Assembly: GCF_006345805.1 (NCBI RefSeq)
Contig: NW_021834598.1
Span: 1-47,082, forward strand
Direction of reading: 5' to 3'
Length of the DNA stretch: 47,082 nt
Origin: Octopus sinensis
Lineage: Eukaryota
Below the pieces are notes generated by a model. That model did not search any database. It was not told where the DNA came from and worked only from the letters and a program-made list of their open reading frames with translations. The translations under genes were made by a program, and so were the position numbers. Positions 1 through 46,900 of the stretch are shown here, in pieces (position 1 is the first letter of the stretch; every line of letters starts with the position of its first letter).

Positions 1-299
1 GGGTCGATAAATTAAGTACCAGTTACGCACTGGGGTCGATGTAATCGACTTAATACCTATGTCTGTCCTTGTTTGTCCCCTCTGTGTTTAGCCCCTTGCG
101 GGTAGTAAAGAAATAGGTATTTCGTCTGCGTTACGTTGTGAGTTCAAATTCCGCCGAGGTCGACTTAGCCTTTCATCCTTTCGGGGTCGATAAATTAAGT
201 ACCAGTTACGCACTGGGGTCGATGTAAATCGACTTAATACCTATGTCTGTCCTTGTTTGTCCCCTCTGCGTTTAGCCCCTTGTGGGTAATAAAGAAATA
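1..299 (+). mobile_element. SINE-A1 head-to-tail array (at least 2 units, cut by window start)
   Basis: Two ~184-bp units GGTATTTCG...GAGTTCAAATTCC (B box)...GGGTCGATAAATTAAGTACC...GTAAAGAAATA, junction 115|116. Confidence 0.85.
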
Positions 300-2270: not shown

Positions 2271-2679
2271 TGACTCCAAAAGCTAACGCTAAATTCAGCG
2301 AAGAATTCAAAGACCAATAAAATTAGAGTAATAAAGAAAAGAGAACATTTTTCTCTCGTTTCATTCTTGTAGACTTTATTATGTATTCCAGACAAAGTTT
2401 CCTTTCAGATTAAATATGTTCTTGTTCGTTTTCGTTTTTGCTTTTTATTCATGTATGAAATATGAAATAAATTCATTAAAGTTTTGTAATTAGTAAGTGT
2501 GAAATGTCTTACAATGTAGAACCGTTTTTCGTTTCTTCTTCTTTTAGTTCTGGTTTCCAATTCAGGAAGTAAGCCAGGATTTGAACTGAGCATGTAAAAG
2601 GTCGGAAGAAATACCACAAAGTTCTTCTTTTTTCTTTGTTTTGTTTTCCAACTGTTGAAGTGCAAGAATCTTTAAATAA

Positions 2680-3300
2680 AGGGGATTTGGTGGATAACAT
2701 TGCCCTCAGTATTTTACTGGGCTGCGAGCTGGCAGAAACGTTAGCACGCCGGGCGAAATGCTTTGTGGTATTTCGCCCGCCGCTGAGTTCTGGAGTTCAA
2801 ATTCCACTGAGGTCGACTTTGCCTTTCATCCTTTCGGGGTCGATAAATTAAGTACCAGTTACGCACTGGTGTCGATGTAATCGACTTAATACCTATGTCT
2901 GTCCTTGTTTGTCCCCTCTGTGTTTAGCCCCTTGTGGGTAATAAAGAAATAGGTATTTCGTCCGCCGCTGAGTTCTGGAGTTCAAATTCCACCGAGGTCG
3001 ACTTTGCCTTTCATCCTTTCGGGGTCGATAAATTAAGTACCGGTTATGCACTGGGGTCGATGTAATCGACTTAATCCGTGTTTCTGTCCTTGTTTGTCCT
3101 CTGTGTTTAGTCCCTTGTGGGTAGTAAAGAAATAAGTATTTTACTGGTACTTTATTGCATCGACATTGGTGGGTGGGATGGAATAAGATGTTGACGTTGT
3201 GGGAATTTGAACTCAGCATATAAAAAAGCTGGAATAACACAAAGCATTTCTTCCAACGCTCTCACTATTCAACCAGCTTCCTCTTTATCTTCAAGGACAA
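2680..3300 (-). mobile_element. Old diverged SINE-A copy interrupted by the A1 dimer
   Basis: 2680-2720 and 3135-3300 rejoin into the reverse complement of the SINE-A body (ACTGGTAC..ATCGAC..GGAATTTGAACTCAG). Confidence 0.6.
2721..3134 (+). mobile_element. SINE-A1 dimer with 13-bp TSD
   Basis: TSD AGTATTTTACTGG at 2708-2720 and 3135-3147; internal junction AAAGAAATA|GGTATTTCG at 2951|2952. Confidence 0.9.
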
Positions 3301-3424
3301 GACCAGAAATTTTTAAGGGGAGAGGTTTTAACAAATACCATTGATCCCTGGCTTTAGTAAAGTATTATGCAAACTGTTTACTTTAGTGAAGCTGGGGTCT
3401 TCAGCTACTGAAGGCAGTACATAG

Positions 3425-3600
3425 GTGGTGCATTATTTTGTAGGCCCTAGATGGACTGAAAAGCAAAACTGACTTCGGTGGGATTTGAGCTTAGAATATA
3501 AAGCGCTGGACCTGTAGTTTCCGGCTCGGAATTTCTGGAACCACCGTTGATACCGCTAAGCATTTCGTCCGGCGTGCTAACGATTCTGCCAGCTCGCCAC
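3425..3600 (-). mobile_element. SINE-A copy carrying a 39-bp mariner-derived insert
   Basis: GGATTTGAGCTTAGAA...TACCGCTAAGCATTTCGTCCGGCGTGCTAACGATTCTGCCAGCTCGCC = reverse complement of SINE-A head; 3512-3550 is foreign. Confidence 0.75.
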
Positions 3601-3604
3601 CAAT

Positions 3605-12369: not shown

Positions 12370-12818
12370 GTCATGCCTCCTCATTGATATGACTGTCCCA
12401 ATCGATATAAACGTATCTATCAAGACCTACCAAAAACTTAGCAAGTATAAAGATCTTGAAACAGAAATGTGGAACCTCAAGACCAAAACAATACCTGTTG
12501 TGATAGGTGCCCTAGGAATGATAGCAAAAGCGGCTGATTGCTACCTAGCTCAGAGACGAGGAAACCCCAAAATGGCAGAAATTCAAAAGATAGTGTTCAT
12601 GGGAACTGCCCGTATCCTACGTAAAATACTGTCTATGTAATCTCAAATTTTAAAACAAGCTTATAATTTTCTTATGTTTTATTAAACATTCTCTTGAACA
12701 ATTCTATGCGCAAAACCAAATATATGACACCAACATGAACTTCTAATTTGTTTCTCTTGAGGTCTCTTGGTGAGACTTGGGGGTCAACTTGTACAACTAC
12801 AACGCAAAGGTCAAACAT
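12370..12818 (+). mobile_element. R4/Dong-like 3' fragment
   Basis: IDMTVPIDINVSIKTYQKLSKYKDLE...WNLKTKTIPVVIGALG...IQKIVFMGTARILRKILS plus ~180-bp UTR, followed by (TAA)n. Confidence 0.8.
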
Positions 12819-12842
12819 ATAATAATAATAATAGTAAAAATA

Positions 12843-14397
12843 ATACCTCTAACACTGATTCTGAGGAAAGCAAAGGCTGGGTACGTACTCAAGAGCCGCC
12901 AAGAAAAAGTCAACAGCTTGTTATTCATGGATGACCTCAAACTTTATAATAAAGATGAATCCCAAGTCAGTTCCCTCATTGATACGGTGTATACTTTCAG
13001 TGCTGATATCAGAATGGAGTTCGGACTGAAAAAGTGTGGTGTGTTAGTCCTGAAGAGAGACAAAATCAAATGTATGGACGAGCTAGTTATAAGCAGATAG
13101 AAGAGACGGGTTATAAGTAACTGGGGATATTGGAAATGGATAAATTTATTGAGAAAGCAATGACAGAAAAATTTAAGGTGGAGTACTTGCACAGATTGAG
13201 ACTGATCCTTAAGTCGAAATTAAACAGACGGAATACGATTGAAGCTATCAACACCTGGGCGGTTTCACTCCTTAGATATTGAGCAGGGGTAATCGCGTGG
13301 ACAGTAGACGAACTAAACAGCTTAGAAGACAAGGAAGACAAGGAAGTTGCTGACTAGATATAGGATATTCCACCCAAAAAGTGACTGTATGTACCATGAA
13401 AAAGAGGGGGAAAAGGACTGATTGGATGCGAACACAGCATTAGAACAGAAGAAAACAATATAGCACGGTATGTAAAAAATGCCACAGAACCGCTCTTATA
13501 GGAAGTAAGAAGGTCAGGCTTGTGTAGGATGGAAGATTGCAAAGATAAAGCACTGTACAAGGACTTGAGAATGAATGTAGCTGAAAATAGGTGGATAAAG
13601 AAAAGAATGCATGGACAATTTCATAGGGACGTTGAAGATAAGACAGATAGAGAAAAAAGATGGCTATGGATGACTAAAAGTGATTTAAAACCAGAAACGG
13701 AGGCTCTAATCTGTGCTGTCTAAGATTAAGCATTAAGAACCAATGAAATCAAATACGGAATAGACGACATATCAGAAAGTGGTATGTGCAGAATTGTTGA
13801 CAAAACGGTGAAACCGTATGACATATTACCAATCAATGAATGCCACTAGCCCAGAAAGAATAAAAGAGACATCATCACAATATAGCAAGGATTGTCCATT
13901 TGACACTTTGCAACAAGTATGAACTTGACAGAGCAAAAAAGTAGTACGAACATCGAAAATGATAAAGCAAAGTTCCTATGGGATTTTATGATTCAATGCA
14001 ACCATGAGATAGAGAATAGGAAGCCAGACATAGTATTGATTGAGAAAGAAAGCTAACGATACTGGATCATATATATAGCATGCCCAGCTAACAATAAGGC
14101 ATGCTTAAGGAAGAAAGAAAAGTCGATGACAAGTTAGCTTGAAAGGTGGTCGATGAAAAAGGTGGTTATTGTACCAATAATTGTCGGAGCCCCGGGAACA
14201 GTGAGTAAAAATCTTGAGAAGTGCATGGAACAAATATGGGCTGCAATAAGGTGTAGCACTTGCAGAAAACAGCACTGCTTGGAACCGCTCGAATACTCCG
14301 GATGGTGCACGAAAAATAAGGGATGTTACCTTAGTTTACTGGTAGTGAGCAGCTGGCAACTGTAGTACATCTCCAGCGTTAGAACATGTGCAAAGGC
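12843..14397 (+). mobile_element. R4/Dong-like retrotransposon pseudogene (RT C-half to REL endonuclease)
   Basis: IPLTLILRKAKAGY, LLFMDDLKLY, MEFGLKKC, MHGQFHR, ETEALICA, RKPDIVLIEK, IVPIIVGAPG; many stops and frameshifts. Confidence 0.9.
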
Positions 14398-14415: not shown

Positions 14416-14629
14416 GGGTTTCAAATTTTCCCACAAGGGCAGCAGTTTCGGGGGAGGAGATCAGTTGACTACATCGACCCCAGTGTTCAACTGGAACTTA
14501 TTTTATCGACCCCGAAAAGATGAAATGCAAAGTCGACCTCGGCGAAATTTGAACTCAGAACGTAGCGACGGGTGAAACATCAATAAGCATTTCGTCCAGT
14601 GCGCTAACGATTCTGCCAGCTCGCTGCCT
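14416..14629 (-). mobile_element. SINE-A, tail type 2, near full length
   Basis: Reverse-complement head plus tail ...CCCTTGTGGGAAAATTTGAAACC. Confidence 0.8.
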
Positions 14630-14754
14630 AATAATAATAATGATAATAATAATAATAATAATGATAATAATAATAATAATAATAATACTTTCTACTAATA
14701 ACATTTTCTACTTTCGACCCCGAAAGCATGAAAGACAAAGCCTACAGTAATAAT

Positions 14755-16830: not shown

Positions 16831-17588
16831 TATTCATACACACATGTAAGAAAGGTATTTAGACAAGTTCCTTTACTCTACTTACACATAACTTCGATCG
16901 ATTTTCCTTTATAATTGTGTATGTGTTCGTGCGTGTGTGTGTGTAGTGATAGAGACTGAATGAATGAGAAAGAGAGAAAGAAAGTGACAAGGAGAAAGAC
17001 ATTGAGAGAGAGAGAGAGAGGGGGAGAAAGTGAGAGAGAGAGTGAGAGGAAGATATACGGAAGTAGTGAGAAAGGGAAAAAAAGTAGTTCGAAGCAACTC
17101 GTCTAAACAGCGTCTTTCTTGTAATATTTGATTGATATTCAATAATAACGAACGGCCGATAATCGATACAAAAGTATTGTTGTCGATTTTTTCTCTTTCT
17201 TTTCTCTTTCTTTTCTTTTCTTTTCTTTTCTTTATCTTCGCTGTTTAATAAACCTTTTTGCAGATGTTGTCTATGAAATAGTTATTTAAATAAGATAAAA
17301 CGTAAAACAAATAAACCTGAATGAATATAGGTTAAGGGCGAAATGAATGAAGAAAACATTTTTTTTTCATAAGCAAAGTACGAAACAAAAAAAAAAAGAC
17401 ACAACAAAACCTGTAAAACAAAAGTCAACAAAAGTAAACAATTGCTGTTTTTAACGTAAATTAAAGTTGCTTTACATAATTTCGGTTCCATTAAAACGCT
17501 ATTGTTCAACAAAAGTCTCTGATCGTATCGATTCGGACACAAATTTTGAAAATAACCTAATTAAAGAAGAGAATCCGGTTGAGCAAGT

Positions 17589-18460: not shown

Positions 18461-19857
18461 CAGGGTCTTGGAGATAAATTAAGGCAATTTTTAAGATGCA
18501 TGAAACTGGTTAAAAATACTAAAATAATGGTAGTAAACAGATATAATTTTAATGCAACATTTATTAAAACAAAAATATTTATCACTCAATATGGCTGCCC
18601 TTTTGGGCAACTACTGCCTCCACACGAGAAAGAAATGTTTTTGCATCTGTCGCAACCTCCGCCTTTTTAATTTTGTTTGTTGCATGCACGATGCAGGTCT
18701 TCAAACTGTTGACACTCGAACCTGGTGAAGCATTGGTCTTTGCTTAAAGTACACCTCATAAAAGTAATCGGGAATGTTGAGATTTAGGCTGTTACTGGGC
18801 CAACATGTTGGCCCTCACAAAAATGGCACCTTTCACCAAGGAAAGCCTATGTTGTTTTTGACTCATGGCATGGTGCAGTATCCTGGATAAGCACCACATT
18901 GTCAAGCCCAAACTTCTGCTCCATCGAAGGTAACAGTGAATTCTTCAGGATGTGCAGATACTCCTTTCTGCCGACCTTCAAGTCAGACTGAATGAAGTGT
19001 GGATCCATGACACTTCCATCGCTTCCCACAGCTCCATATACCATCACAGAGGCAGGATTCTTAGTCTCAAACAAGGGGAGACATCAAAAGGTTTGTATGC
19101 TATCACTCGAAAATTTCTGAAATTCACCTCAGCGTCCACTATCAAGTTCTCGTCCGCAAATACGAGAGTGTTTTCTGCACCTTGATACTTGATAAATGAC
19201 AAAAGCTTTGGGCATCTCTCGGCTCTGATTGCTTTGGCCTTGGCTGTTAGGAGGTGTCGGCGGCGGCGAACACAGCTAGTCATGCCTAGGTTCCTGTCCA
19301 CAGGACACCGTGGAAAGGGACACATTGCTTTTCTTTGCAAGCGTTTTCATGGACTGGCCTTGGCTGTTAGGAGGTGTCGGTGGCGGCGAACACAGCTAGT
19401 CATGCCTAGGTTCCTGTCCACAGGACACCGTGGAAAGGGACACATTGCTTTTCTTTGCAAGCGTTTTCATGGACGTGGATGAGATGAGTTGGTTTCAATC
19501 AAGCGTTTGAGGTCACCAAGAAACTTTGGATTGCGCTTGGAATCACTTCATATCTTGCGTTCTTTCCGATCAATCTTTCCCTCTTCTTTAAATTGCTTAT
19601 AAACACGATAAACTGTTGCTTTTAGAAGCTTCATCAACTTAACAATTTTGTAGGTAGTGTGCTCGGCGCGCGCCTAAACAACAACGGCGGAACGATTCTG
19701 CTGTTCTACCACTTTCTGTTGTCAAATTAGTTCGCTATTTACAAGAAAAGTAAAGAGGAGGACTAGATTTCTGGGGAAGCAAGCATTTGTCAAATGAAAT
19801 GTTGAACCCACAAAGTCAACTGCTTAAAATTGGTTTCAATTTATCTACATGACCCTG
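18461..19857 (-). mobile_element. maT-type (DD37D) Tc1/mariner transposon pseudogene
   Basis: TIRs CAGGGTCTTGGAGATAAATT / AATTTATCTACATGACCCTG, TA flanks; VFADE, IQDTAPCH and degenerate WPSNSxxLNxxDY with 37 residues between 2nd and 3rd D after correcting one frameshift. Confidence 0.88.
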
Positions 19858-22432: not shown

Positions 22433-23385
22433 TAGTTTCAACTCAGAGCTATGGCCATGCTGGAGCACCGCCGTTTTGCTACATTGTTATTACTGAGAGC
22501 CTCCTCTAATATGTTGCCCTTGGTGAAGAACGGAGTTTGATGTAACGACCCTCATTTGCATCTCTTGCCGTGAGATAGGTTCATCTGGGACTCTCGACAG
22601 GAAGCTGTCCAGCCTTGATTTAAGAAAGCCTTCATCTACTTTGTGCAGGTTCCTCAGGCTCTTTGGGAGAATGTTAAAAAGCTGTAGGCCCTTGAAACCC
22701 AGGCAGTTACAGTAACTGGTCCTAAAGCGCGGTGGCATTGCTGGGATCTTTGGCACTATGCAATGTAGACCCATTCTGGCATTGGTGTAGCTTTCAATGC
22801 CAAAATTTGGCACACTTCCTTCCAGGGTCTTCCAGATGTATATTACTGCACACCTCTCCTGCCTTCGCTCCAGGGAGTAGAGTCTTAGCTGTGTCAGCCT
22901 AATAGCTGAGCTGTTGCAAAGAGACGATCTTTGTGAAGCTTCGCTGGATTGTTTCAAGGTCCGCTGTTAATTTTACACAGTTGGGTGACCATAGCAGGGA
23001 GCAGTAATCCAGCTGGCTGAGGACGAATGTCCTCCAGAGGACCACATGGTTTCCTTATATCTGGTTCTGAATGTTCTCAGGATCCAGCCAGCCAGTCGTC
23101 TGCACTTTGTCGCTATCCTGGTAATGTGCACTTGGAAAGAGGTATCATCATTCATGTCGATACACAGGTCCCTCACTGATCTAGGCTCTGGGATTGTAAT
23201 TCCCTGTGGATCAGTGCACCATGTAAGTTTCATATTCAGTTTTGGACGCTGGTAGCGCAGGGCTTGGATTTTTTCAGCATTAAACTGCATATTATTATCC
23301 TCAGCCCAACTCCTGCTGCAGATGTACAACATCGCTGGGGTTCTGTATTTTCTGCGAGACTTTCGTATCGTCGTCTGGAGGAGAT
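22433..23385 (-). mobile_element. CR1-like LINE, 5'-truncated
   Basis: DDTKVSQKI, WAEDNNMQFNAEK, GWILRTF, YSLERRQERC, LQLFNILPKSLRNL, LDSFLSRVPDEP; homologous to 45060-46008. Confidence 0.85.
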
Positions 23386-23413: not shown

Positions 23414-23603
23414 TTTAGCGGCATTTCGTCTGTCTTTATGTTCTGAGTTCAAATTCCGCCGAGGTCGACTTTGCCTTTCATTCCTTTGGGTTCGATAAAT
23501 AAAGTACCAGTTATGCACTGGGATCGACGTAATCGACTTAATCCCTTTGTCTGTCCTTGTTTGTCCCCTCTTTGTTTAGCCCCTTGTGGGCAATAAAGAA
23601 ATA
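23414..23603 (+). mobile_element. SINE-A1, 5'-truncated, abutting the head of another SINE-A
   Basis: Ends AAAGAAATA followed directly by AGAAACTTTAGCATGCCGGGCG. Confidence 0.8.
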
Positions 23604-24030
23604 AGAAACTTTAGCATGCCGGGCGAAATGCTTAGCGGTATTTCGTCTATTTAAGGCGGCGAGCTGGCAGTAACGTTAGTACGCCGGGCGAAATGCGTAG
23701 CCGTATTTGGTCTGCCGTTTCGTTCTGAGTTCAAATTTCGCCGAGGTCGACTTTGCCTTTCATGCTTTCGGAGTCGATAAATTAAGTACCAGTTACGCAC
23801 TGGGGTCAATGTAATCGACTTAATCCGTTTGTCTGTCCTTGTTTGTCTCCTCTGTTTATCCCCTTGTGGGTAGTAAAGAAATAGAAATAGGTATTTCGTC
23901 TGTCTTTACGTTCTGAGTACAAATTCCATCGAGGTCAACTTTGCTTTTCATCCTTTCGGGGTCGATAAATAAAGTACCAGTTGCTGGTCCCTCTCCCCAA
24001 ATTTCGGGCCTTGTGCCTAGAGTAGAAAAA
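23604..24030 (+). mobile_element. SINE-A (tail type 3) host split by a nested A1
   Basis: 23604-23648 and 23902-24030 rejoin into one copy. Confidence 0.85.
23649..23889 (+). mobile_element. Full-length SINE-A1 nested in a SINE-A head, 12-bp TSD
   Basis: GGTATTTCGTCT at 23637-23648 and 23890-23901; element runs ATTTAAGGCGGCGAGC...GTAAAGAAATAGAAATA. Confidence 0.92.
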
Positions 24031-24039
24031 GAATCTACA

Positions 24040-24170
24040 CGGTGGAGGCACGTGGCACAGTGGTGTTGGATTCATTATCGCGAGGTTGTGGTGTTAGTTC
24101 CAGGTGATGCTTTCTGTTCTTGAGCAAAACGCTTCATTTTATTTTGCCCCAGCCTACTCAGCTGGCAAAA
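24040..24170 (+). mobile_element. Diverged SINE-B-like 5' part
   Basis: GTGGAGGCACGTGGC..AGTGGT...GTTCTTGAGCAAAAC...ACTCAGCTG. Confidence 0.5.
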
Positions 24171-25163: not shown

Positions 25164-25183
25164 TAATAATGATAATATTAATA

Positions 25184-25630
<447 letters not shown>

Positions 25631-29235: not shown

Positions 29236-29502
29236 GTTGAACTGAGTGAAAGGTAAAAGCATGTGATATTTAAAGCAAATTTGCTGATTTTTTAGAGACG
29301 TTAAAAAAAAATGTTAATCTTATATGCCATCGGTTACGGTATATCTTTCAGTCAAATCTGATCGCATATCTGTTCGTACAATGAAATAATTCCAAAACGG
29401 TTTGTGCTCGATGTGGAAATGAACTGAGATGTTTTCGTCAAGGTTTTAATGGATAAGTTTTGTTTTTCATCTTTCAGCATATAATTCATTTTGCATTTTA
29501 TT

Positions 29503-30482
29503 GATTAGCTATGGTAACATTTTATTGGATATCTACAGTAACATTTTAATGGCTATCAGTTGTAACATTTTAATTGCTACCATTTGTAACTTTTTAACGG
29601 GTATCCATTGAGAAATTCTAATAGCTGTAATTTGTAAATACACTTCGAGGTGATTTGTTAAGCATTTAAAACAAAACTAACGGAATAAATGTCTGTAGAA
29701 AATCCAGAAGGAAGGACCCTTAGGCTCATATGTATGGTTACATTTAGTCAATATTTGGCACCCCTTGTGGCCTCATGGATACTGTGAACGCATTGGCTTG
29801 TCATTTCTTCGTTGAGAGAAGTTAAGTGTATTTCGGGATAGGCTCTTGCTTCTGGAAACAACCGTGGTTGAAAAGCAAACTTCTAACCACACAGCCACGA
29901 CTTTTAAAATTTTAATAGCTATATTTGTAACATTTTATAACAATCTATCCTAGCATTTTAATATCTATTAATTATAGCATTAGCATTTTAATGGGATTCT
30001 ATTGTAAGATTCTAATCATCAACTTTAGTAACATTTTAATGAGAATCCATCGTAACATGTTAATGTTTTCCAATTTTAGCATTGTAATAGCTATCGTAGC
30101 ATTTTAATGGCAATACATTGTAACATTCTAATCTCCATCTATTGCAGCATTTTAATGGTAATCCATCGTAACATTTTAATGTCTATCAATAATAGCATTT
30201 TAAATTTTAATGGCAATCCATCTTAAATTTCGATTCGCCATATATTGTAGCATTTTAATGGCAATCCATCGTAACAGTCTAATGACCATCTATTGTAATA
30301 TTTTAATTGCTATGCAACGTAACATTCTAATGACTATCAATTGTAACATTGTAATCACTATCCATCATAACGTTTTAATAGTTATCAATTGCCGCATTTT
30401 AATTGCTATCTAAGGTAACAGTCGAATGGCTACATATCGCAAAATATTAATTGCTATCCATGGTAGCATTTAAATGATTATC
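29503..30482. repeat. Degenerate 24-bp minisatellite (consensus near TAATGGCTATCCATTGTAACATTT) interrupted at ~29640-29905
   Basis: Recurring GTAACATTTTAAT; 8-aa periodicity of ORF 30210-30413. Confidence 0.85.
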
Positions 30483-33624: not shown

Positions 33625-33916
33625 ATATAAATAATAATAATACTATAATAATAATATAATAATATAATATAATAATAAGAATAGCAATAATAAAATAATA
33701 TGAATGATGATGACGATGATGATATAATAATAATAATAATAATAATAACAATAATAATAATAATAATATAGCAATAATAAAAATAACGATATGATGACGA
33801 TGATGATGATAATAATAATAATAATAAAATAATATAATAATAATCATAATAATAATAAATAATAAGCAATAATAAAAATAATGATGACGATGATGATGAT
33901 GATAATATATAATATA

Positions 33917-33953
<37 letters not shown>

Positions 33954-34290
33954 TAATAATAATATTATAATAAATAATCGCATTTTGGGTCTGCTCATTT
34001 TCCATCACATTGGCCGGGTAGTTCCGGGTTAATAGCTTTGATCTGAGCAGCCAGGATACACCTCGCTCTCTACCTTCGCTCTCTGTTTTAGCCTTGCTCC
34101 GTAGCCACTGATGGGTTTGCTTCTGGTCAACATCTTTGCCTAGGAGTGGGAAGACACTCGGCAAGAAATGGAAGCAAATTGAAAGAAGAAAAAAAAAGTA
34201 ATAATAATAATAATAATAATAATAGCAATAATAAAAATAATGATGATGATGATGACGATGATGATGATAATGATAATAATAATAATAATA

Positions 34291-34595: not shown

Positions 34596-36353
34596 GAACT
34601 TAGAATCTCTACTCAGGTGGCATACTCTTGGGGAAAGTTAATATCTATTTCTTTACTACCCACAAGGGGCTAAACACAGAGCGAGGAAACAAGGACAGAC
34701 AAACAGATTAAGTCGATTACATCGATCCCAGTGTGTAACTGGTACTTAATTTATCGACCCCGAAAGGATGAAAGGCAAAGTTGACCTCGGCGGAATTTGA
34801 ACTCAGAACGTAACGGCAGACGAAATACCGCTAAGCATTTCGCCTGGCGTGCTAACGTTTCTGCCAGGGAAAGTTAATATCAAAAGAGGAATTTTCCAAA
34901 TGGACTCGTTGTCCTTTTTAATATTTGTTTAACGTTTGATACCCGCCTCAGTTTAGTATTAAGGAAGGCAAAGACAAGGTATCAGTTATGAAATAGTAAG
35001 GGAAAAATTAACCATTTGCTCTACATGGATGGTCTGAACCTTTTTAGTGAAAAAGAGATAGATTCCTTTCTACAGACTGTAAAACTCTTCAGCAAAGACA
35101 TAAGAATGGAATTTGGTATAGATAAGTGTGCAATATTAGTCATGAGAAGGAGACAGGTAGACAATAGTGAAGGTATCCAATTACAAGATGACCAGACATT
35201 AAAATCATTGAAAGGAAGAGAGAGTTATAAGTATCTAGGAGTATTAGAATCTGACAGGGTCCTAACTACAGAAATGAAAACGAATATTAAGAAGAGGTAC
35301 ATCAGAAGGGTGAGGAAGCTAATGAAGTCAAAGCTAAATGGTCCGAATCTAATGAAGGCTGTAAATACTCGGGCAATATCATTACTTAGATACTTTGCAG
35401 CTTTTGTAGATTGGAGAAAAAGTGAATTGGCAAAGCTAAACAGAAGAACTAGGAAGGAATTCAGGTGAATGGAGGACTCCACCCAAGGGTAGGAGTAGCA
35501 AGATTATATTTACCTAGAAAGGAAGGCGGAAGAGGGTTAATATCAGTTGAAGACTGCCTGGAGTTAGCTTGAGTAGATATAGACTCCTATGTAGGTAATA
35601 GTGAACAAAGTTTATTAGCAGCTGCTAGAGTCACAGCAAGACATAGGGAAACCACAAACCCAAACGATCTTAAAAACAAGAAAAAAGAAAAGAAATTATT
35701 TGACTGGCATGAGAAGGCGTTGCATAGTAGATTCCCAAAGATAGTTGCAGCTAATAGTAGCAGTGAGACATTGTTATGGTTGCAGAAAGGACAAATGAGA
35801 AAGGAAACAGAACGTTTGTTAGTAGCTGGACAAGATCAAGCATTAAGGACTAATTGAATAAACGCCAAGATAGACAAAGACCAAGAATATTCCCAATGTA
35901 TGTTATGCAAATGAAAAAAGGAAAGCGTTTCTCATAGAAAGAATACAAGACATGACAATCTAGGGAGAGTAATCCACTGGGAGCTATGTAGAAACCTAGG
36001 ATTTGAACACACTGAACATGAACCTAGCAAAGTACTAGAAGGTAAGAAATCTAAGATGTTATGAGACTAACATTCAGACTGACAGAGTAATAGAGGCTAG
36101 AAGGCCTGACTTGGTAGTAGTAAAGAGAATAGAAAGTGCCAGATAATTGACTTTACAGTCCAAAATGAGGAAAGCATTTGTATGAGAAGTATAGAAAATA
36201 ATTGAAAATAACCAGGACCTAGCTATTGAATTACAGAGACTATGGAAAGTGCGTTTAAAATGTATCCCAGTAGTTATAGGTGCATTGGGAACTATACCTA
36301 AAGATCTGAACAAATGGATAGAGGAAATAGGCATAAAACCCAGTATAGAGCAA
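34596..36353 (+). mobile_element. R4/Dong-like pseudogene, interrupted by SINE-A1, lacking its own 3' end
   Basis: TLGKVNIKRGIFQ.DSLS, LYMDGL, MEFGIDKC, YKYLGVLE, RLYLPRKEGGRGL, ARRPDLVVVK, IPVVIGALGTI. Confidence 0.9.
34646..34866 (-). mobile_element. SINE-A1 monomer with 15-bp TSD
   Basis: GGGAAAGTTAATATC at 34631-34645 and 34867-34881. Confidence 0.92.
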
Positions 36354-37265: not shown

Positions 37266-37286
37266 AATGGAAATATTAATAATAAT

Positions 37287-38037
37287 GGTTTCAAATTTTG
37301 CCACAAGGGCGGCCATTTTGGGGTAGGGGATGAGTCGATTACATCGACTCCATTGTCTCACTGGTACTTAATTTGTCGACCCCGAAAGGATGAAAGGCAA
37401 AGTCGACATCGGCATAAGTTAAACTCAGAACGTAGCGACGGGTGAAAAACCTATTTCTTTACTATGCACAAGGGGTTAAACACAGAGGGGACAAACAAGG
37501 ACAGACAAACGGATTAAGTCGATTATATCGACCCCATTGCGTAACTGGTAATTATTTAATCGACCCCGAAAGGATGAAAGGCAAAGTCGACCTCGTCGGA
37601 ATTTGAACTCAGAACGTAGCGGCAGACGAAATACCTATTTCTTTACTACCCACGAGGGGCTAAACACATAGGGGACGAACAAGGACAGACAAACGGATTA
37701 AATCGATTGCATCGACCCCAGTGCGTAACTGGTACTTATTTAATCGACCCCGAAAAGATGAAAGGCAAATTTGAACTTAGAACGTAGGGGCAGACGAAAT
37801 ACCTATTTCTTTATTACCCACAAGGGACTAAACATACAGTGGACAAACAAGGACGGACATAGGTATTAAGTCGATTACATCGACCCCCAGTGCGTAACTG
37901 GTCCTTAATTTATCGACCCCGAAAGGATGAAAGGCAAAGTCGACCTCGGCGGAATTTGAACTCAGAACGTAATGGCAGACGAAATACGGCTACGCATTTC
38001 GCCCGGCGTGCTAACGCTTCTAACAGCTCACCGCCTT
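37287..38037 (-). mobile_element. Four-unit SINE-A array (three A1 tails, one type-2 tail)
   Basis: Junctions at 37803|04, 37635|36, 37451|52; only the 5'-most unit has the full head. Confidence 0.9.
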
Positions 38038-38059
38038 AATAACACAACAACAACAACAG

Positions 38060-44382: not shown

Positions 44383-46007
44383 CAGGAACAGCTTGATGAA
44401 ATGAATCTATTAGAAAAAGAAGCAACCATCGATTACATCAACATAACAGAAGAGGATGTAATATTGTTCATTGATGTAATGAGATCAAACTTAGTATCGG
44501 CTCCAGATAGACTCCTGGCTGTTCGTTTAAAGACATGTAAAAAGTCTCTTGCAAAGCCACTGCAGATACTCTTTCAGTTGCATGTGGTAAACTTCCTAAC
44601 ATGATAAAAGAGGGGGCAATATGCCCTGTTCATAAAGGAGGGAGCAGAGCAGATGCTAAAAACTACAGGCCCATCTCTCTGACTTCATATTTTAGAAGAA
44701 AACAACCTTCTCACAAACACGCAACATGGCTTCCGTCCAGGGAGGAGCTGCTTCACCCAACTGTTGTATCCCTTTAACTGGATACTGAAACGTCTGTAGG
44801 CGTGATTTACCTCGACTTTGCCAAGGCCTTCGACAAGATTCATCATGGCATGATATGTCACAAGCTGCGAAACCTTGGTGTTACTGGGAAACTGGGAGTG
44901 TGGCTGCAGGAATTTCTGAAAGGCAGGAATCAGACAGCTGTAGCCAATTGTGCTCACTCTGAAGAGACACCTATTCTCAGCGGAGTTCCACAGGAAACTG
45001 TACTGGGGCTATTTCTATTCGTGATGGCCCTCTCTGCCGTACAGCCAACCAATCTGACCAGTTATGCTGACGATACAAAAGTATCGCAGGCAGTTTGGAA
45101 CCCAGAGGAGATCATAAAACTGCAGAAAGACATGAATGAAATCTACAAATGGGCTAACAAAAATAGCATACAGTTCAATGCTATGAAATATCAGGCACTC
45201 CACTATCGGTCCGACACCAGGATAAAATCGGAATACACTGGACCAGAAGGTAATACGATCCTAGAGTCAGAGTCAGTGCGTGACCTGGGGTTCACATGAG
45301 CAATGATGCAACATTCCATGTGCATATTCCCAATATGGCAACACTGTGCAGGCGAGTGGGCTGGCTGGATTCTGAGGACATTCAGAACCAGGTAAAGGAG
45401 TTTTGTTACTCCTAGGGAGGACTTTCGTTCTCAGCCGCTTGGACTACTGCGCCTAACTATGGTCTCCAGAGAGTGTGAAACAAACTGTGGAATTCAAAGC
45501 AATCCAGCGCCAGTACACAAAGAAGATTGATTTGATGCAAAAGATGGGCTACATGGAGAGCTAAAGGAGCTGGGTCTCTATTCCCTGGAGAGAAGACGAG
45601 AGAAATATGTGGTGATATATATTTGGAAGGTCTTGGAGGGTTTAGCTCCCACTTTTGGAATTGACAGCTATACCAATCCTTGAACTGGACGGTACTGCAT
45701 CATACCAAATATCCCGTCTTCCCCATCTAGAATAAGGACACAGTACTGCAATAGTCTGGGTTTCAAGGGACCGCAATTGTTCAACACCCTGCCAGGCAAC
45801 CTTAGATATTTAGATGGTGTTGATGTGGAAGGACCGTCTGGACAGGTTTCTGTCTGAGATACCAGATGAACCAACATCACGACAGGAAACACAAAGAAGA
45901 GCAGCTCCGTCCAACTCGCTACTTCGCCAAAAGCAATACCGGAAGCAAAACCGAGTAACTACAGGTGGTGCGCCAGCTTGACCTCAGCCGTGGGAATGAA
46001 ACCAGTA

Positions 46008-46084: not shown

Positions 46085-46900
46085 ATAAAGGATCGTGGAT
46101 AAGGCCAAAACAATGCGAAGTTAGTAAATTGTAAATCACAAGAAAAGAAATATATGAATTAATGTAGACTTATATTCAATATTTCAGGGTTATGACCCTA
46201 TTTTCAAGAAAATAAATGTTGCGATGTGCGTGTGTGTGAGCGTGTATGGAATGGACATGCGCAGAAAGGTGTTGCTATAGCAACCAATTAGTTTCCTGTA
46301 ACTCACTTCTGTTGTTGATCTTAGGTTTCTTTTGGTGTATAAGGAAGGCCTCAGAGATTCTAAGGTTGCCCCTGTTCCGCTGTATTGCCTTGATGTGCAC
46401 TGTGAATTCCCGGGTCTGGCATTTCCGCAGATGTTTCTTCGCAGAAGTGTCTGCTGCACGTGTTCCTTAATGCGTACGTGCAGCTTTCTTGTCGTGCTTC
46501 CTATGTAGGATGTGCCACATTTTGTCACAGATGATATCATATAAACATGGGCCATCTGGCACCATTCATGGCATTGATGAGGCAGTTCGATAATGTGCAC
46601 GGTTCGGAGTAGTGAGAGGTGTTGTTCGTCAACAGAGCTTTTCTCAGGGAAGGACGGTGTGTGCACTATTTGTATGTCGAGTCTTCCCTGCGGACTGCAT
46701 GTTGTATCACTGCAGTAGTTCTGTTGTCAAAGAGTGGCAGCTTTAGGAAGCACGTGCCGGACTTGGGAGTATGATGGTTCTTCCAGGGTTTACTGACTTT
46801 GATGTTCATCAGGCGCCGTTGTTTAGCTAAAGATGGTGGGTGGCCATTCAGGGTTAGATCTCTGAGGAACTGATGGTGTTGATGTGCTTTGTCGGTCACG
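46085..46900 (-). mobile_element. Penelope-like element remnant (RT C-terminus, GIY-YIG endonuclease, 3' repeat region)
   Basis: LNGHP and LKLP motifs, then VYMI..KCGTSYIGSTTRKLHVRIKEH (GIY-YIG-type). Confidence 0.8.
46175..46208 (-). ncRNA. Decayed hammerhead-like motif in Penelope-like 3' region
   Basis: Minus strand TTGAAAA-T-AGGGT(CATA)ACCCT-GAAA: perfect stem II, two core substitutions, stem III unclear. Confidence 0.35.

What the first reader, a model, noticed from the sequence alone, without database searches (positions are those of the whole stretch)
23637..23901. A SINE inserted into the head of its own family, with a clean TSD
Seen: a full-length A1 copy (23649-23889) sits inside another SINE-A head, flanked by GGTATTTCGTCT on both sides. 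The cut point TTAGC|GGTATT lies in the loop of the head's long hairpin (GGGCGAAATGC-TTAGCG-GTATTTCGTCT, 11 bp incl. 3 GU), at the anticodon-arm position. The same AAAGAAATA|GGT junction occurs 6 times at 4 separate loci (115, 2951, 23889, 37451, 37635, 37803). Of 10 A1 3' ends in the window, 7 abut a SINE-A head and 1 more lies inside an antisense SINE-A. Established: TSDs of this length indicate target-primed reverse transcription. Inference: A1 is a self-targeting SINE using older family members as landing pads; I do not know of this being described for this family.
Basis: partly seen in the sequence, partly recalled or inferred. Interest (0 to 1): 0.82.

Follow-up and report, generated by a model that had tools for sequence, protein, structure and literature searches.

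The report
Octopus SINE nested in SINE head
A short octopus retroposon really has inserted into the head of an older relative with a clean 12-bp duplication, but the other copies of the same joint are internal seams of two- to four-unit composite elements, so "self-targeting" is only partly shown.

Summary
A full-length A1 SINE (23649-23889) sits between two perfect copies of GGTATTTCGTCT. Removing it and one repeat restores an intact older "A3-type" SINE-A, so this is a real nested target-primed insertion.

The joint AAAGAAATA|GGTATT recurs five more times in the window and once in an Octopus vulgaris locus I fetched. That is far above what the abundance of the RRTATY motif predicts.

- Only this one joint has the orphan head and duplication that a local landing leaves.
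- The dimer at 2721-3134 and the O. vulgaris A1-A3 composite each carry a single duplication around the whole composite.
- The four-unit array at 38045-37277 has no orphan heads.

These other joints are therefore seams inside composite elements. The two A1 insertions outside SINE heads with both repeats readable start at |RRTATY, a third flank fits and a fourth fits 5 of 6. The head hairpin's 3' arm carries a perfect match. Only A1 tails join there.

Best reading: one nick site in the head. Composites then arise by read-through retroposition of nested copies, or by homology-assisted loss of the redundant head. A reverse-transcriptase template jump remains a live rival.

This is a new variant of known SINE behaviour and is moderately interesting. 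It needs genome-wide and cross-species tests that these tools could not run.

The parts
23604..23648 (+). Orphan head fragment (positions about 21-65) of the older, outer A3-type SINE-A. It ends with the left TSD copy.
   Evidence: nhmmer hit covering hmm 23-68. Collinear with A3 copies once the insert is removed.
23637..23648 (+). Left target-site duplication, GGTATTTCGTCT. It equals G54 plus the 3' arm of the head hairpin.
   Evidence: Exact match positions; hairpin fold.
23649..23889 (+). Full-length inner A1 SINE of the beta subtype, with tail AAAGAAATAGAAATA.
   Evidence: It differs from the A1 consensus by 6.0% substitutions.
23890..23901 (+). Right target-site duplication, GGTATTTCGTCT.
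23890..24033 (+). Remainder of the outer A3-type SINE-A, from position 54 to its tail ...GGGCCTTGTGCCTAGAGTAGAAAAAGAA. It carries a 24-bp internal deletion.
   Evidence: Alignment with O. bimaculoides and O. vulgaris A3 copies.
23414..23605 (+). Older 5'-truncated A1 copy (starts at about position 50). Its tail AAAGAAATA abuts the outer A3 at head position about 21. The A3 probably inserted into this tail.
   Evidence: It is the most diverged of the window's A1 units (7.6%).
2708..2720 (+). Left TSD, AGTATTTTACTGG, of the whole A1 dimer.
2721..2951 (+). Dimer unit a: a near-full-length A1 (alpha 3' part) ending AAAGAAATA.
2952..3134 (+). Dimer unit b: A1 positions 54-236 (beta 3' part), beginning GGTATTTCG.
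   Evidence: TRF reports period 185 and 2.0 copies.
3135..3147 (+). Right TSD, AGTATTTTACTGG, of the whole dimer. The target is an antisense SINE-A relative.
1..299 (+). A1-A1 array cut by the window edge. Unit 1-115 ends AAAGAAATA. Unit 116-299 covers positions 54-236 and is followed by GATATC.
   Evidence: The two units are 97.4% identical.
37277..38045 (-). Four-unit array: A1-alpha full length (38045-37803), A1-beta 54-236 (37802-37635, with a 16-bp deletion), A1-beta 54-236 (37634-37451), then an A2-type unit from 54 to its end with an (ATT)n tail (37450-37277). There is no orphan head upstream.
34631..34881 (-). Solitary A1 (34866-34646, 5'-truncated at about position 16) between 15-bp TSDs, GATATTAACTTTCCC in element orientation.

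Best explanation
The window comes from an Octopus genome rich in one SINE family, which I call SINE-A. All members share a head and body. Three tail types occur: A1 ends ...CCTTGTGGGTARTAAAGAAATA, and A2 and A3 end in other tails followed by (ATT)n.

Shown:
- 23649-23889 is a full-length A1 that entered an older A3-type copy by target-primed reverse transcription. The first nick fell at TTAGC|GGTATT and the second 12 bp downstream, which produced the GGTATTTCGTCT duplication.
- A1 copies integrate at sites reading |RRTA(T)Y on the element strand. The TSDs start GATATT, AGTATT, GGTATT and AATA(A/C)T. One flank without a checkable TSD starts GATATC.
- The 3' arm of the SINE-A head hairpin is a perfect instance of this motif.
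- Only A1 tails are joined at this head site. A2 and A3 tails are followed by the next copy's 5' end instead.
- The other joints lie inside composites of the form [full A1][54-236]n[54-end of A1, A2 or A3]. These composites have no orphan heads. Where the flanks can be read, a single TSD surrounds the whole composite.

Inferred: all joints stem from the same nick in the head. A classical nested copy like 23637-23901 is the primary product. Composites then arise in one of two ways.
- (a) Transcription starts at the inner copy's promoter and reads through its terminator-free tail into the outer copy. The chimeric RNA then retroposes as one unit.
- (b) The redundant outer head is lost on the spot. 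This could happen by annealing of the new cDNA's head to the resident head during integration, or by later deletion between the two adjacent 65-bp head repeats. Either route leaves the resident's own TSD around the composite.

Unequal exchange then adds or homogenises units. This would explain the shared variants of 37802-37635 and 37634-37451, and of the two units at 2721-3134. I cannot separate (a) from (b) with the data available here.
For: Nested insertion:
- Perfect 12-bp repeats lie exactly at the ends of the insert.
- The insert's 5' end, ATTTAAGG, matches other full-length copies.
- The reconstructed empty site is collinear with the A3 consensus.

Target motif:
- RRTATY has a frequency of 0.0026 per position and strand.
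- Both TSD-verified A1 sites outside heads match it (P about 7e-6).
- The O. bimaculoides copy has a 16-bp TSD, AATA[C/A]TATAAGGCCTA, which matches 5 of 6.

Composites are units:
- TSD AGTATTTTACTGG surrounds the dimer.
- TSD CATCAACCT surrounds the O. vulgaris A1-A3 composite.
- No orphan heads lie upstream of 38045 or 2708.

Not plain DNA duplication:
- The phase is always the exact 3' end of the element.
- The downstream unit can be A1-alpha, A1-beta, A2 or A3.

The joint depends on tail type:
- A1 tails join head site 54 seven times and another head position once.
- A2 and A3 tails join site 54 zero times and other positions at least nine times (Fisher P = 4e-4, or 2e-3 on a conservative count).

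Other points:
- No copy that starts at position 54 has anything other than an A1 tail upstream.
- The order of divergence in the arrays fits younger units lying 5': 4.9% for the first unit at 38045, then 7.8% and 6.6%; 5.4% then 6.6% at 2721-3134.
- I read no run of four or more T in the A1 units shown, so Pol III read-through is plausible.
Against: - The sample is small: 47 kb of window plus 96 kb from two other species. It holds 13 A1 3' ends, and only one is a proven nested copy.
- Joints within an array are not independent events.
- No LINE partner with the A1 tail was found, so it is unknown whether the endonuclease or the priming step sets the target motif.
- Neither read-through transcripts nor homology-assisted resolution has been observed.
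- The shared 35-bp variant block in both units of the 2721-3134 dimer needs an extra step, such as gene conversion.
- The outer TSD of the four-unit array cannot be read because it lies in microsatellite sequence.
- A template jump that requires the same primer end would give identical structures.
Confidence: 0.55

Rival explanations
1. Reverse-transcriptase template jump. During one TPRT event the cDNA copying a SINE-A RNA ends at G54. This could happen because the RNA is cut in the exposed hairpin loop, or because only a cDNA end reading ...AATACC-3' mimics the preferred nicked target. Synthesis then continues on the 3' end of an A1 RNA. Composites would form in a single event with one outer TSD.
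For: - One TSD surrounds each whole composite and there are no orphan heads.
- Units of different subfamilies are joined end to end with a complete A1 tail.
- The break point lies at the boundary between the loop and the 3' arm of a stable hairpin.
- One solitary A1 copy starts in the same loop, at about position 50 (23414).
- Template switching is the explanation usually offered in the literature for exchange of SINE modules (PMC4758252; PMC3272025).
Against: - It cannot produce the 23637-23901 structure, so a second mechanism would have to hit the same phosphodiester bond.
- The joint matches the DNA target motif of solitary A1 insertions. Under a pure RNA-break model that is a coincidence (motif frequency 0.0026).
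- The acceptor is always A1 and never the commoner A2 or A3.
- No copy starting at position 54 lacks an upstream A1 tail.
Confidence: 0.25
2. Every AAAGAAATA|GGTATT joint marks an independent A1 insertion into an older copy at that locus, each resolved in the classical way with a TSD.
For: - One clear case exists, at 23637-23901.
- The site is strongly over-represented among A1 3' ends.
Against: - Classical nesting leaves one orphan head (positions 1-65) per downstream unit. None is present at 2708, at 38045, or at the O. vulgaris locus.
- TSDs surround whole composites.
- Counting TSD-proven events only, 1 of 4 lies in a head (P = 0.18).
Confidence: 0.07
3. Purely DNA-level tandem duplication or unequal crossing-over of a 183-bp segment: a SINE-derived mini-satellite, with no retroposition involved in making the joint.
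For: - TRF finds arrays with period 184-185.
- Neighbouring units share private variants: GATTAAATAA in 37802-37635 and 37634-37451, and GCCGCTGAGTTCTGGAG in both units at 2721-3134.
Against: - The duplication phase coincides exactly with the element's 3' end at every locus.
- A1 tails are joined to A2 and A3 units, which no duplication of a single element can produce.
- The first and second units of the 38045 array belong to different subtypes and are 88% identical.
- Duplication probably contributes to array growth but not to the origin of the joint.
Confidence: 0.06

Closest known systems
Nested SINE-in-SINE insertions at preferred internal sites, for example Alu into the A-rich linker or tail of older Alus (own knowledge)
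   Same: A retroposon's target preference is matched by a motif inside older family members. Insertions therefore pile up at a fixed internal position, with ordinary TSDs.
   Different: Here the motif is RRTA(T)Y in a hairpin arm of the head rather than an A-rich tract. Most instances lack the orphan 5' part, so they are composites rather than simple nests.
Dimeric, trimeric and composite SINEs built by insertion or by RT template switching (reviewed in the introduction of PMC4758252; an example is proposed in PMC3272025)
   Same: Units from different SINE lineages are joined head to tail and move, or are bounded, as one element with a single TSD.
   Different: The repeated unit is a 5'-truncated copy starting at one exact nucleotide. 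The same joint links A1 to A1, A2 and A3 partners, which implies recurrent formation rather than one founding dimer.
Site-specific non-LTR retrotransposons of the R2/R4/Dong type (own knowledge); Dong-R4 elements are listed among recently active O. vulgaris LINEs in PMC13282606
   Same: The same phosphodiester bond is used recurrently. Read-through RNA carrying downstream target sequence could in principle help priming. The A2 and A3 relatives sit in (ATT)n/(TAA)n repeats.
   Different: The two A1 insertions outside heads with readable TSDs match the motif only over six bases (a third TSD, in O. bimaculoides, matches 5 of 6), so specificity is loose. No partner LINE or endonuclease type was identified.
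Octopus tRNA-derived SINEs OK, OR1 and OR2 (Ohshima and Okada 1994, cited in PMC4824008 and PMC4758252)
   Same: The host genus is the same. There is a B-box-like GAGTTCAAATTCC and a body that, from memory, resembles CORE-SINEs.
   Different: I had no reference sequences to compare. ARAGORN and Rfam detect no tRNA in the head.

Membership tests
LINE-dependent (TPRT) retroposon / SINE | Variable-length target-site duplications directly flanking individual copies | tested here: met
   TSDs of 12, 13, 15 and 16 bp at 23637/23890, 2708/3135, 34631/34867 and in L001.
LINE-dependent (TPRT) retroposon / SINE | A fixed 3' end with variable 5' truncation | tested here: met
   Tail AAAGAAATA in 9 of 10 window copies. 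5' starts fall at positions 1, 9, 16 and 50.
LINE-dependent (TPRT) retroposon / SINE | A partner LINE sharing the 3' tail | tested here: inconclusive
   No occurrence of the A1 tail outside SINE copies in 143 kb. LINE RT fragments are present but unrelated at their 3' ends.
tRNA-derived SINE | A head recognisable as a tRNA, with A and B boxes | tested here: inconclusive
   ARAGORN found no tRNA and Rfam gave no tRNA match at E<=1. Only a B-box-like GAGTTCAAATTCC is visible. The head folds as a long hairpin, not a cloverleaf.
Nested TE insertion | A TSD at the inner element's borders, and a host element restored when the insert and one TSD copy are removed | tested here: met
   for 23637-23901 only.
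Nested TE insertion | The same criteria applied to the other five AAAGAAATA|GGT joints | tested here: not met
   No orphan head and no inner TSD at 2952, 37803, 37635 or 37451. The joint at 116 cannot be tested because the window edge cuts it.
Composite / dimeric SINE | One TSD around the whole multi-unit element | tested here: met
   Window 2708-3147 and O. vulgaris L002 17198-17579. Unreadable for the 38045 array, which lies in microsatellite sequence.
Composite / dimeric SINE | Many genomic copies of the same composite, forming a family with shared diagnostic changes | not testable with these tools
   No octopus genome could be searched by DNA. The composites seen differ in make-up: alpha-alpha, alpha-beta, alpha-beta-beta-A2, A1-A3.
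Site-specific non-LTR system (R2/R4/Dong-like) | The great majority of insertions lie at one defined target sequence | tested here: not met
   Of four TSD-proven A1 insertions, three are at unrelated loci. Two share only RRTATY, and the third (the O. bimaculoides L001 copy) only 5 of its 6 bases.
SINE-derived satellite (DNA-level tandem repeat) | Homogeneous units with arbitrary phase, and neighbours more alike than copies at different loci | tested here: not met
   The phase is the exact 3' end of the element. Units are heterologous (A1/A2/A3). Identity within arrays is 88-97%, against 89-97% between loci.
CORE-SINE superfamily / octopus OR1-OR2 | Sequence identity to the CORE domain or to the published OR consensus | not tested
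   No reference sequence was available. The resemblance is from memory only.

The most novel reading that the evidence does not exclude
A1 may be, in effect, a site-specific SINE whose preferred target is the hairpin site in its own family's head. Copies sitting at that site would be transcribed through into GGUAUUUCGUCU..., and that downstream target sequence would then anneal to a freshly nicked head elsewhere, much as R2 uses downstream 28S sequence. Landing in a head would therefore create the next source gene. The fixed-phase multi-unit arrays and the looser RRTATY off-target sites would be by-products. This self-reinforcing 'SINE parasitising its own family' would also help explain the hundreds of unclassified composite SINE families reported for O. 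vulgaris (PMC13282606).
Probability: 0.2. Interest if true: 0.7.

Novelty: new variant of a known kind. Interest (0 to 1): 0.42.

Why it matters
SINEs make up about 11.6% of the O. vulgaris genome, and most of its recently active SINE families are unclassified (PMC13282606). A fixed-phase joint that strings A1, A2 and A3 units together would be a simple generator of that diversity. It is also a trap for automated repeat annotation. Dimers and trimers can be read as new families or as tandem repeats, and in the O. bimaculoides locus assembly gaps fall inside SINE-A copies.

Mechanistically, the locus offers a natural test of how a non-L1 LINE/SINE pair chooses its target and resolves the 5' junction. 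The choices are classical second-strand nicking, homology-assisted joining, or template jumping. It does not change any larger picture. Nested insertion, target motifs and composite SINEs are all established phenomena.

Tried and rejected
- **Genome-wide tabulation of A1 3' ends.** Exact-pattern scans of metagenome contigs and viral contigs found nothing.
- **Sampling more octopus DNA through proteins.**
  - An antisense SINE ORF hit only one O. bimaculoides protein, which gave L001 (76 kb).
  - A LINE C-terminal ORF hit one O. vulgaris protein, which gave L002 (20 kb).
  - An RT ORF gave only ENA contigs. An exact pattern scan found no SINE-A core in the two fetched (L003, L004), and BLAST with A1 found nothing in L003. 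I take them to be from other organisms.
  - A look-up of a window ORF was not on record. The source record and the orthologous loci were therefore not obtained.
- **tRNA origin of the head.** ARAGORN found none and Rfam gave no tRNA match.
- **Partner LINE tail.** Not found in any held sequence.
- **Microhomology between the A1 tail and the target.** The tail end GAAATA matches RRTATY at only 4 of 6 positions, with the same two mismatches each time. Simple tail-to-target annealing does not explain the motif.
- **Structural RT pausing as the cause of the position-54 joint.** I rejected this. A pause would be expected at the 3' base of the hairpin (about position 66), not after the stem has been copied.
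- **The O. bimaculoides '[7-106][52-235]' arrangement.** This is an artefact of an assembly gap (a run of N), not a joint.
- **Literature.** Searches found no description of this joint or of self-nesting in octopus SINEs. The library lacks the 1994 paper that defined the octopus SINEs.

Full report
**What the window is**

The sequence is AT-rich, full of microsatellites and carries LINE reverse-transcriptase and Penelope-like fragments. ORFs from it hit Octopus bimaculoides and Octopus vulgaris proteins. The same SINE occurs in loci fetched from both genomes (L001 and L002). The window is therefore from an Octopus genome.

A1 copies are denser in the window and in the O. vulgaris sample than in O. 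bimaculoides. The counts are 10 in 47 kb, 2 in 20 kb and 1 in 76 kb. This fits the O. vulgaris-lineage SINE burst reported in PMC13282606. That link is my inference.

**The family**

An nhmmer model built from eleven long copies finds about 30 copies in the window, covering 8.8% of it. All copies share a head and body of about 175 bp. Three tail types occur.
- A1 ends ...CCTTGTGGGTARTAAAGAAATA.
- A2 ends ...CCTTGTGGCAAAATTTGAAACC(ATT)n.
- A3 ends ...CCTTGTGCCTAGAGTAGAAAAGA.

The consensus head contains a 13-bp hairpin, CGGGCGAAAUGCU-UAGC-GGUAUUUCGUCUG (-16 kcal/mol, z = -3.15). Neither ARAGORN nor Rfam recognises a tRNA.

**Checking the observation**

- GGTATTTCGTCT lies at 23637-23648 and 23890-23901, exactly bracketing 23649-23889.
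- The insert begins ATTTAAGG, as does the full-length copy at 37268, and ends AAAGAAATAGAAATA.
- The flanks are two pieces of one older A3-type copy: 23604-23648 (positions about 21-65) and 23890-24033 (position 54 to the end).
- Joined through a single repeat copy, they align collinearly with A3 copies from both other species.

This is a textbook filled site and a real nested insertion.

The motif AAAGAAATAGGT occurs 5 times against 0.05 expected. With the variant at 23889 that makes six joints at four loci.

Classical nesting gives outer[1-65] inner[1-236] outer[54-end]. An array with m downstream units would need m orphan heads upstream. That is not what the other loci show.
- At 2708-3147, the structure [A1 9-236][A1 54-235] is flanked as a whole by a 13-bp duplication, AGTATTTTACTGG. 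Antisense SINE sequence, not an orphan head, lies upstream.
- At 38045-37277 (minus strand), the array reads A1 full length, A1 54-236, A1 54-236, then A2 from 54 to its end. It is preceded by the tail of an unrelated A2 copy plus a microsatellite.
- In O. vulgaris (L002 17570-17207, minus strand), an A1 is joined at AAAGAAATA|GGTATTTCA to an A3 unit running from 54 to its end. The whole is flanked by CATCAACCT at 17198-17206 and 17571-17579.
- The locus at 1-299 is cut by the window edge.

Five of the six joints in the window, and the O. vulgaris one, are therefore seams inside composite elements. They are not local landings of the classical kind.

**They are not plain DNA duplications either**

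- The phase is always the exact 3' end of A1.
- The downstream partner may be A1-alpha, A1-beta, A2 or A3.
- The first and second units of the 38045 array are only 88% identical.

Some exchange between neighbours has happened. Units 37802-37635 and 37634-37451 share GATTAAATAA. The two units at 2721-3134 share a 35-bp block of private variants while differing at the alpha/beta diagnostic sites further 3'.

**What ties the joints together**

First, A1 has a target motif. The TSDs start:
- GATATT at 34631/34867;
- AGTATT at 2708/3135;
- GGTATT in the nested case;
- AATA[C/A]T in the O. bimaculoides copy.

The uncheckable flank at 300 starts GATATC. RRTATY occurs at 0.0026 per position and strand. 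Two verified non-head sites matching by chance has P about 7e-6.

Second, RRTATY occurs at one recurrent position in SINE-A, the start of the hairpin's 3' arm. Only a few degenerate copies carry a site elsewhere.

Third, the joint depends on the tail type. A1 tails meet the next unit at position 54 seven times and at about position 21 once. A2 and A3 tails meet the next copy at positions 1-23 (once at 101) at least nine times, and never at 54 (Fisher P = 4e-4, or 2e-3 on a conservative count).

Fourth, no copy that starts at position 54 has anything other than an A1 tail upstream.

Head sites make up about 4.9% of RRTATY sites in the window but take 6 of 10 A1 3' ends (P about 2e-6, or 3e-4 conservatively). 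These events are not independent. Counting only TSD-proven insertions gives 1 of 4 in a head (P = 0.18).

**Mechanism**

The simplest account uses one lesion: the A1 integration nick at TTAGC|GGTATT in a SINE-A head. The classical outcome is 23637-23901. Composites can follow in two ways.
- **(a) Read-through retroposition.** The inner copy's promoter drives transcription through its own tail, which I read as free of T-runs, into the outer copy. The chimeric RNA then retroposes using whichever tail lies at its 3' end. This predicts A1-type target sites around A1-ended composites (AGTATT at 2708, GATATC at 300) and A3-type or (ATT)n sites around the others, as observed.
- **(b) Loss of the redundant head in place.** The new cDNA's head could anneal to the resident head during integration. 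Alternatively, a later deletion could occur between the two adjacent 65-bp direct repeats. Either leaves the resident's TSD around [1-236][54-end].

Both routes place younger units 5'. That agrees weakly with the divergences: 4.9%, then 7.8% and 6.6%; and 5.4%, then 6.6%. I cannot separate (a) from (b) here.

The main rival is a template jump from a cDNA ending at G54 to the 3' end of an A1 RNA. It gives the same composites and is the mechanism usually invoked in the literature. It has three weaknesses.
- It cannot make the nested locus.
- It must treat the match to the DNA target motif as a coincidence, or add a primer-end requirement.
- It does not explain why the acceptor is always A1.

I rejected structural RT pausing, because a pause would be expected before the stem and not after it.

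**Local history at the finding**

The likely order is:
1. an A1 truncated at about position 50 inserted (23414-23605; the most diverged of the window's A1 units at 7.6%);
2. an A3 truncated at about position 21 inserted into or next to its tail, consistent with the tail-targeting seen elsewhere for A2 and A3;
3. the full-length A1 inserted into the A3 head.

**Comparison and novelty**

Nested insertions at preferred internal motifs, composite or dimeric SINEs, and site-biased non-LTR integration are all known. What appears undescribed, within the limits of the searchable library, is a fixed-phase joint in octopus SINEs that links one tail type to a hairpin site in the family's own head and builds arrays of two to four units. 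I rate this a new variant of a known kind, of moderate interest.

The more novel reading is a self-reinforcing, R2-like site-specific SINE that targets its own family. It is not excluded, but it rests on one proven nested copy.

**Limits**

- Only 143 kb of octopus sequence was available.
- No partner LINE was identified.
- No population or orthologous-site data could be obtained.

Noticed in passing
window 14629-14687, 25164-25314, 33630-33978, 37277-37286; L001 75260-75296, 66212-66236: A2- and A3-type copies end in (ATT)n and sit in or beside long (ATT)n/(TAA)n microsatellites. New copies start directly after older tails, for example L001 66212 with a probable TSD AAGAATATA. This suggests tail or microsatellite targeting by a TAA-repeat-specific LINE. 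A Dong/R4-like partner is my guess and was not tested.
   Followed up: partly
window 3410-3603 (-): A SINE-A copy carries a 45-bp foreign block (CAACGGTGGTTCC...GGTCCA) immediately after GGTAT. This is the same hairpin site used by A1.
   Followed up: no
L001 40786-40795 and 68700-68935: Assembly gaps (runs of N) in the O. bimaculoides chromosome fall inside SINE-A copies. One of them creates a false partial duplication of an A1 copy.
   Followed up: yes
window 22490-23332 (-), 44802-45299 (+), 12777-13100 (+), 35016-35468 (+), 46190-46666 (-): The window holds degenerate LINE reverse-transcriptase ORFs (RVT_1) and one ORF with a weak, below-threshold match to the GIY-YIG domain (possibly Penelope-like; my guess). 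The LINE fragment at 22490-23332 lies just upstream of the nested SINE cluster but does not share its tail.
   Followed up: partly
window 19235-19474: A 120-bp unit is duplicated in tandem at 99% identity, in otherwise unique-looking GC-richer sequence.
   Followed up: no
window 29494-30482: A degenerate satellite with a 24/48-bp period (GTAACATTTTAATG...) spans about 1 kb.
   Followed up: no
window 24040-24160: A different repeat with box-A-like TGGCACAGTGG starts right after the outer A3 tail. It may belong to a second SINE family.
   Followed up: no
window 2577-2707 and 3148-3278: The A1 dimer is inserted into an antisense, diverged SINE-A relative. The insertion point corresponds to ...AAGTACCAGT|AAAATACT in that element's own orientation.
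   Followed up: partly
window units 2766-2951, 37803-37987, 1-299 versus 2952-3134, 37451-37802, 23702-23889, 34646-34829: There are two A1 subtypes: alpha (ACCTATG, mostly GGGTAAT) and beta (CCGTTTG, GGGTAGT). In the two complete arrays (2721-3134 and 38045-37277) the 5'-most, full-length unit is alpha and the downstream A1 units are beta.
   Followed up: partly
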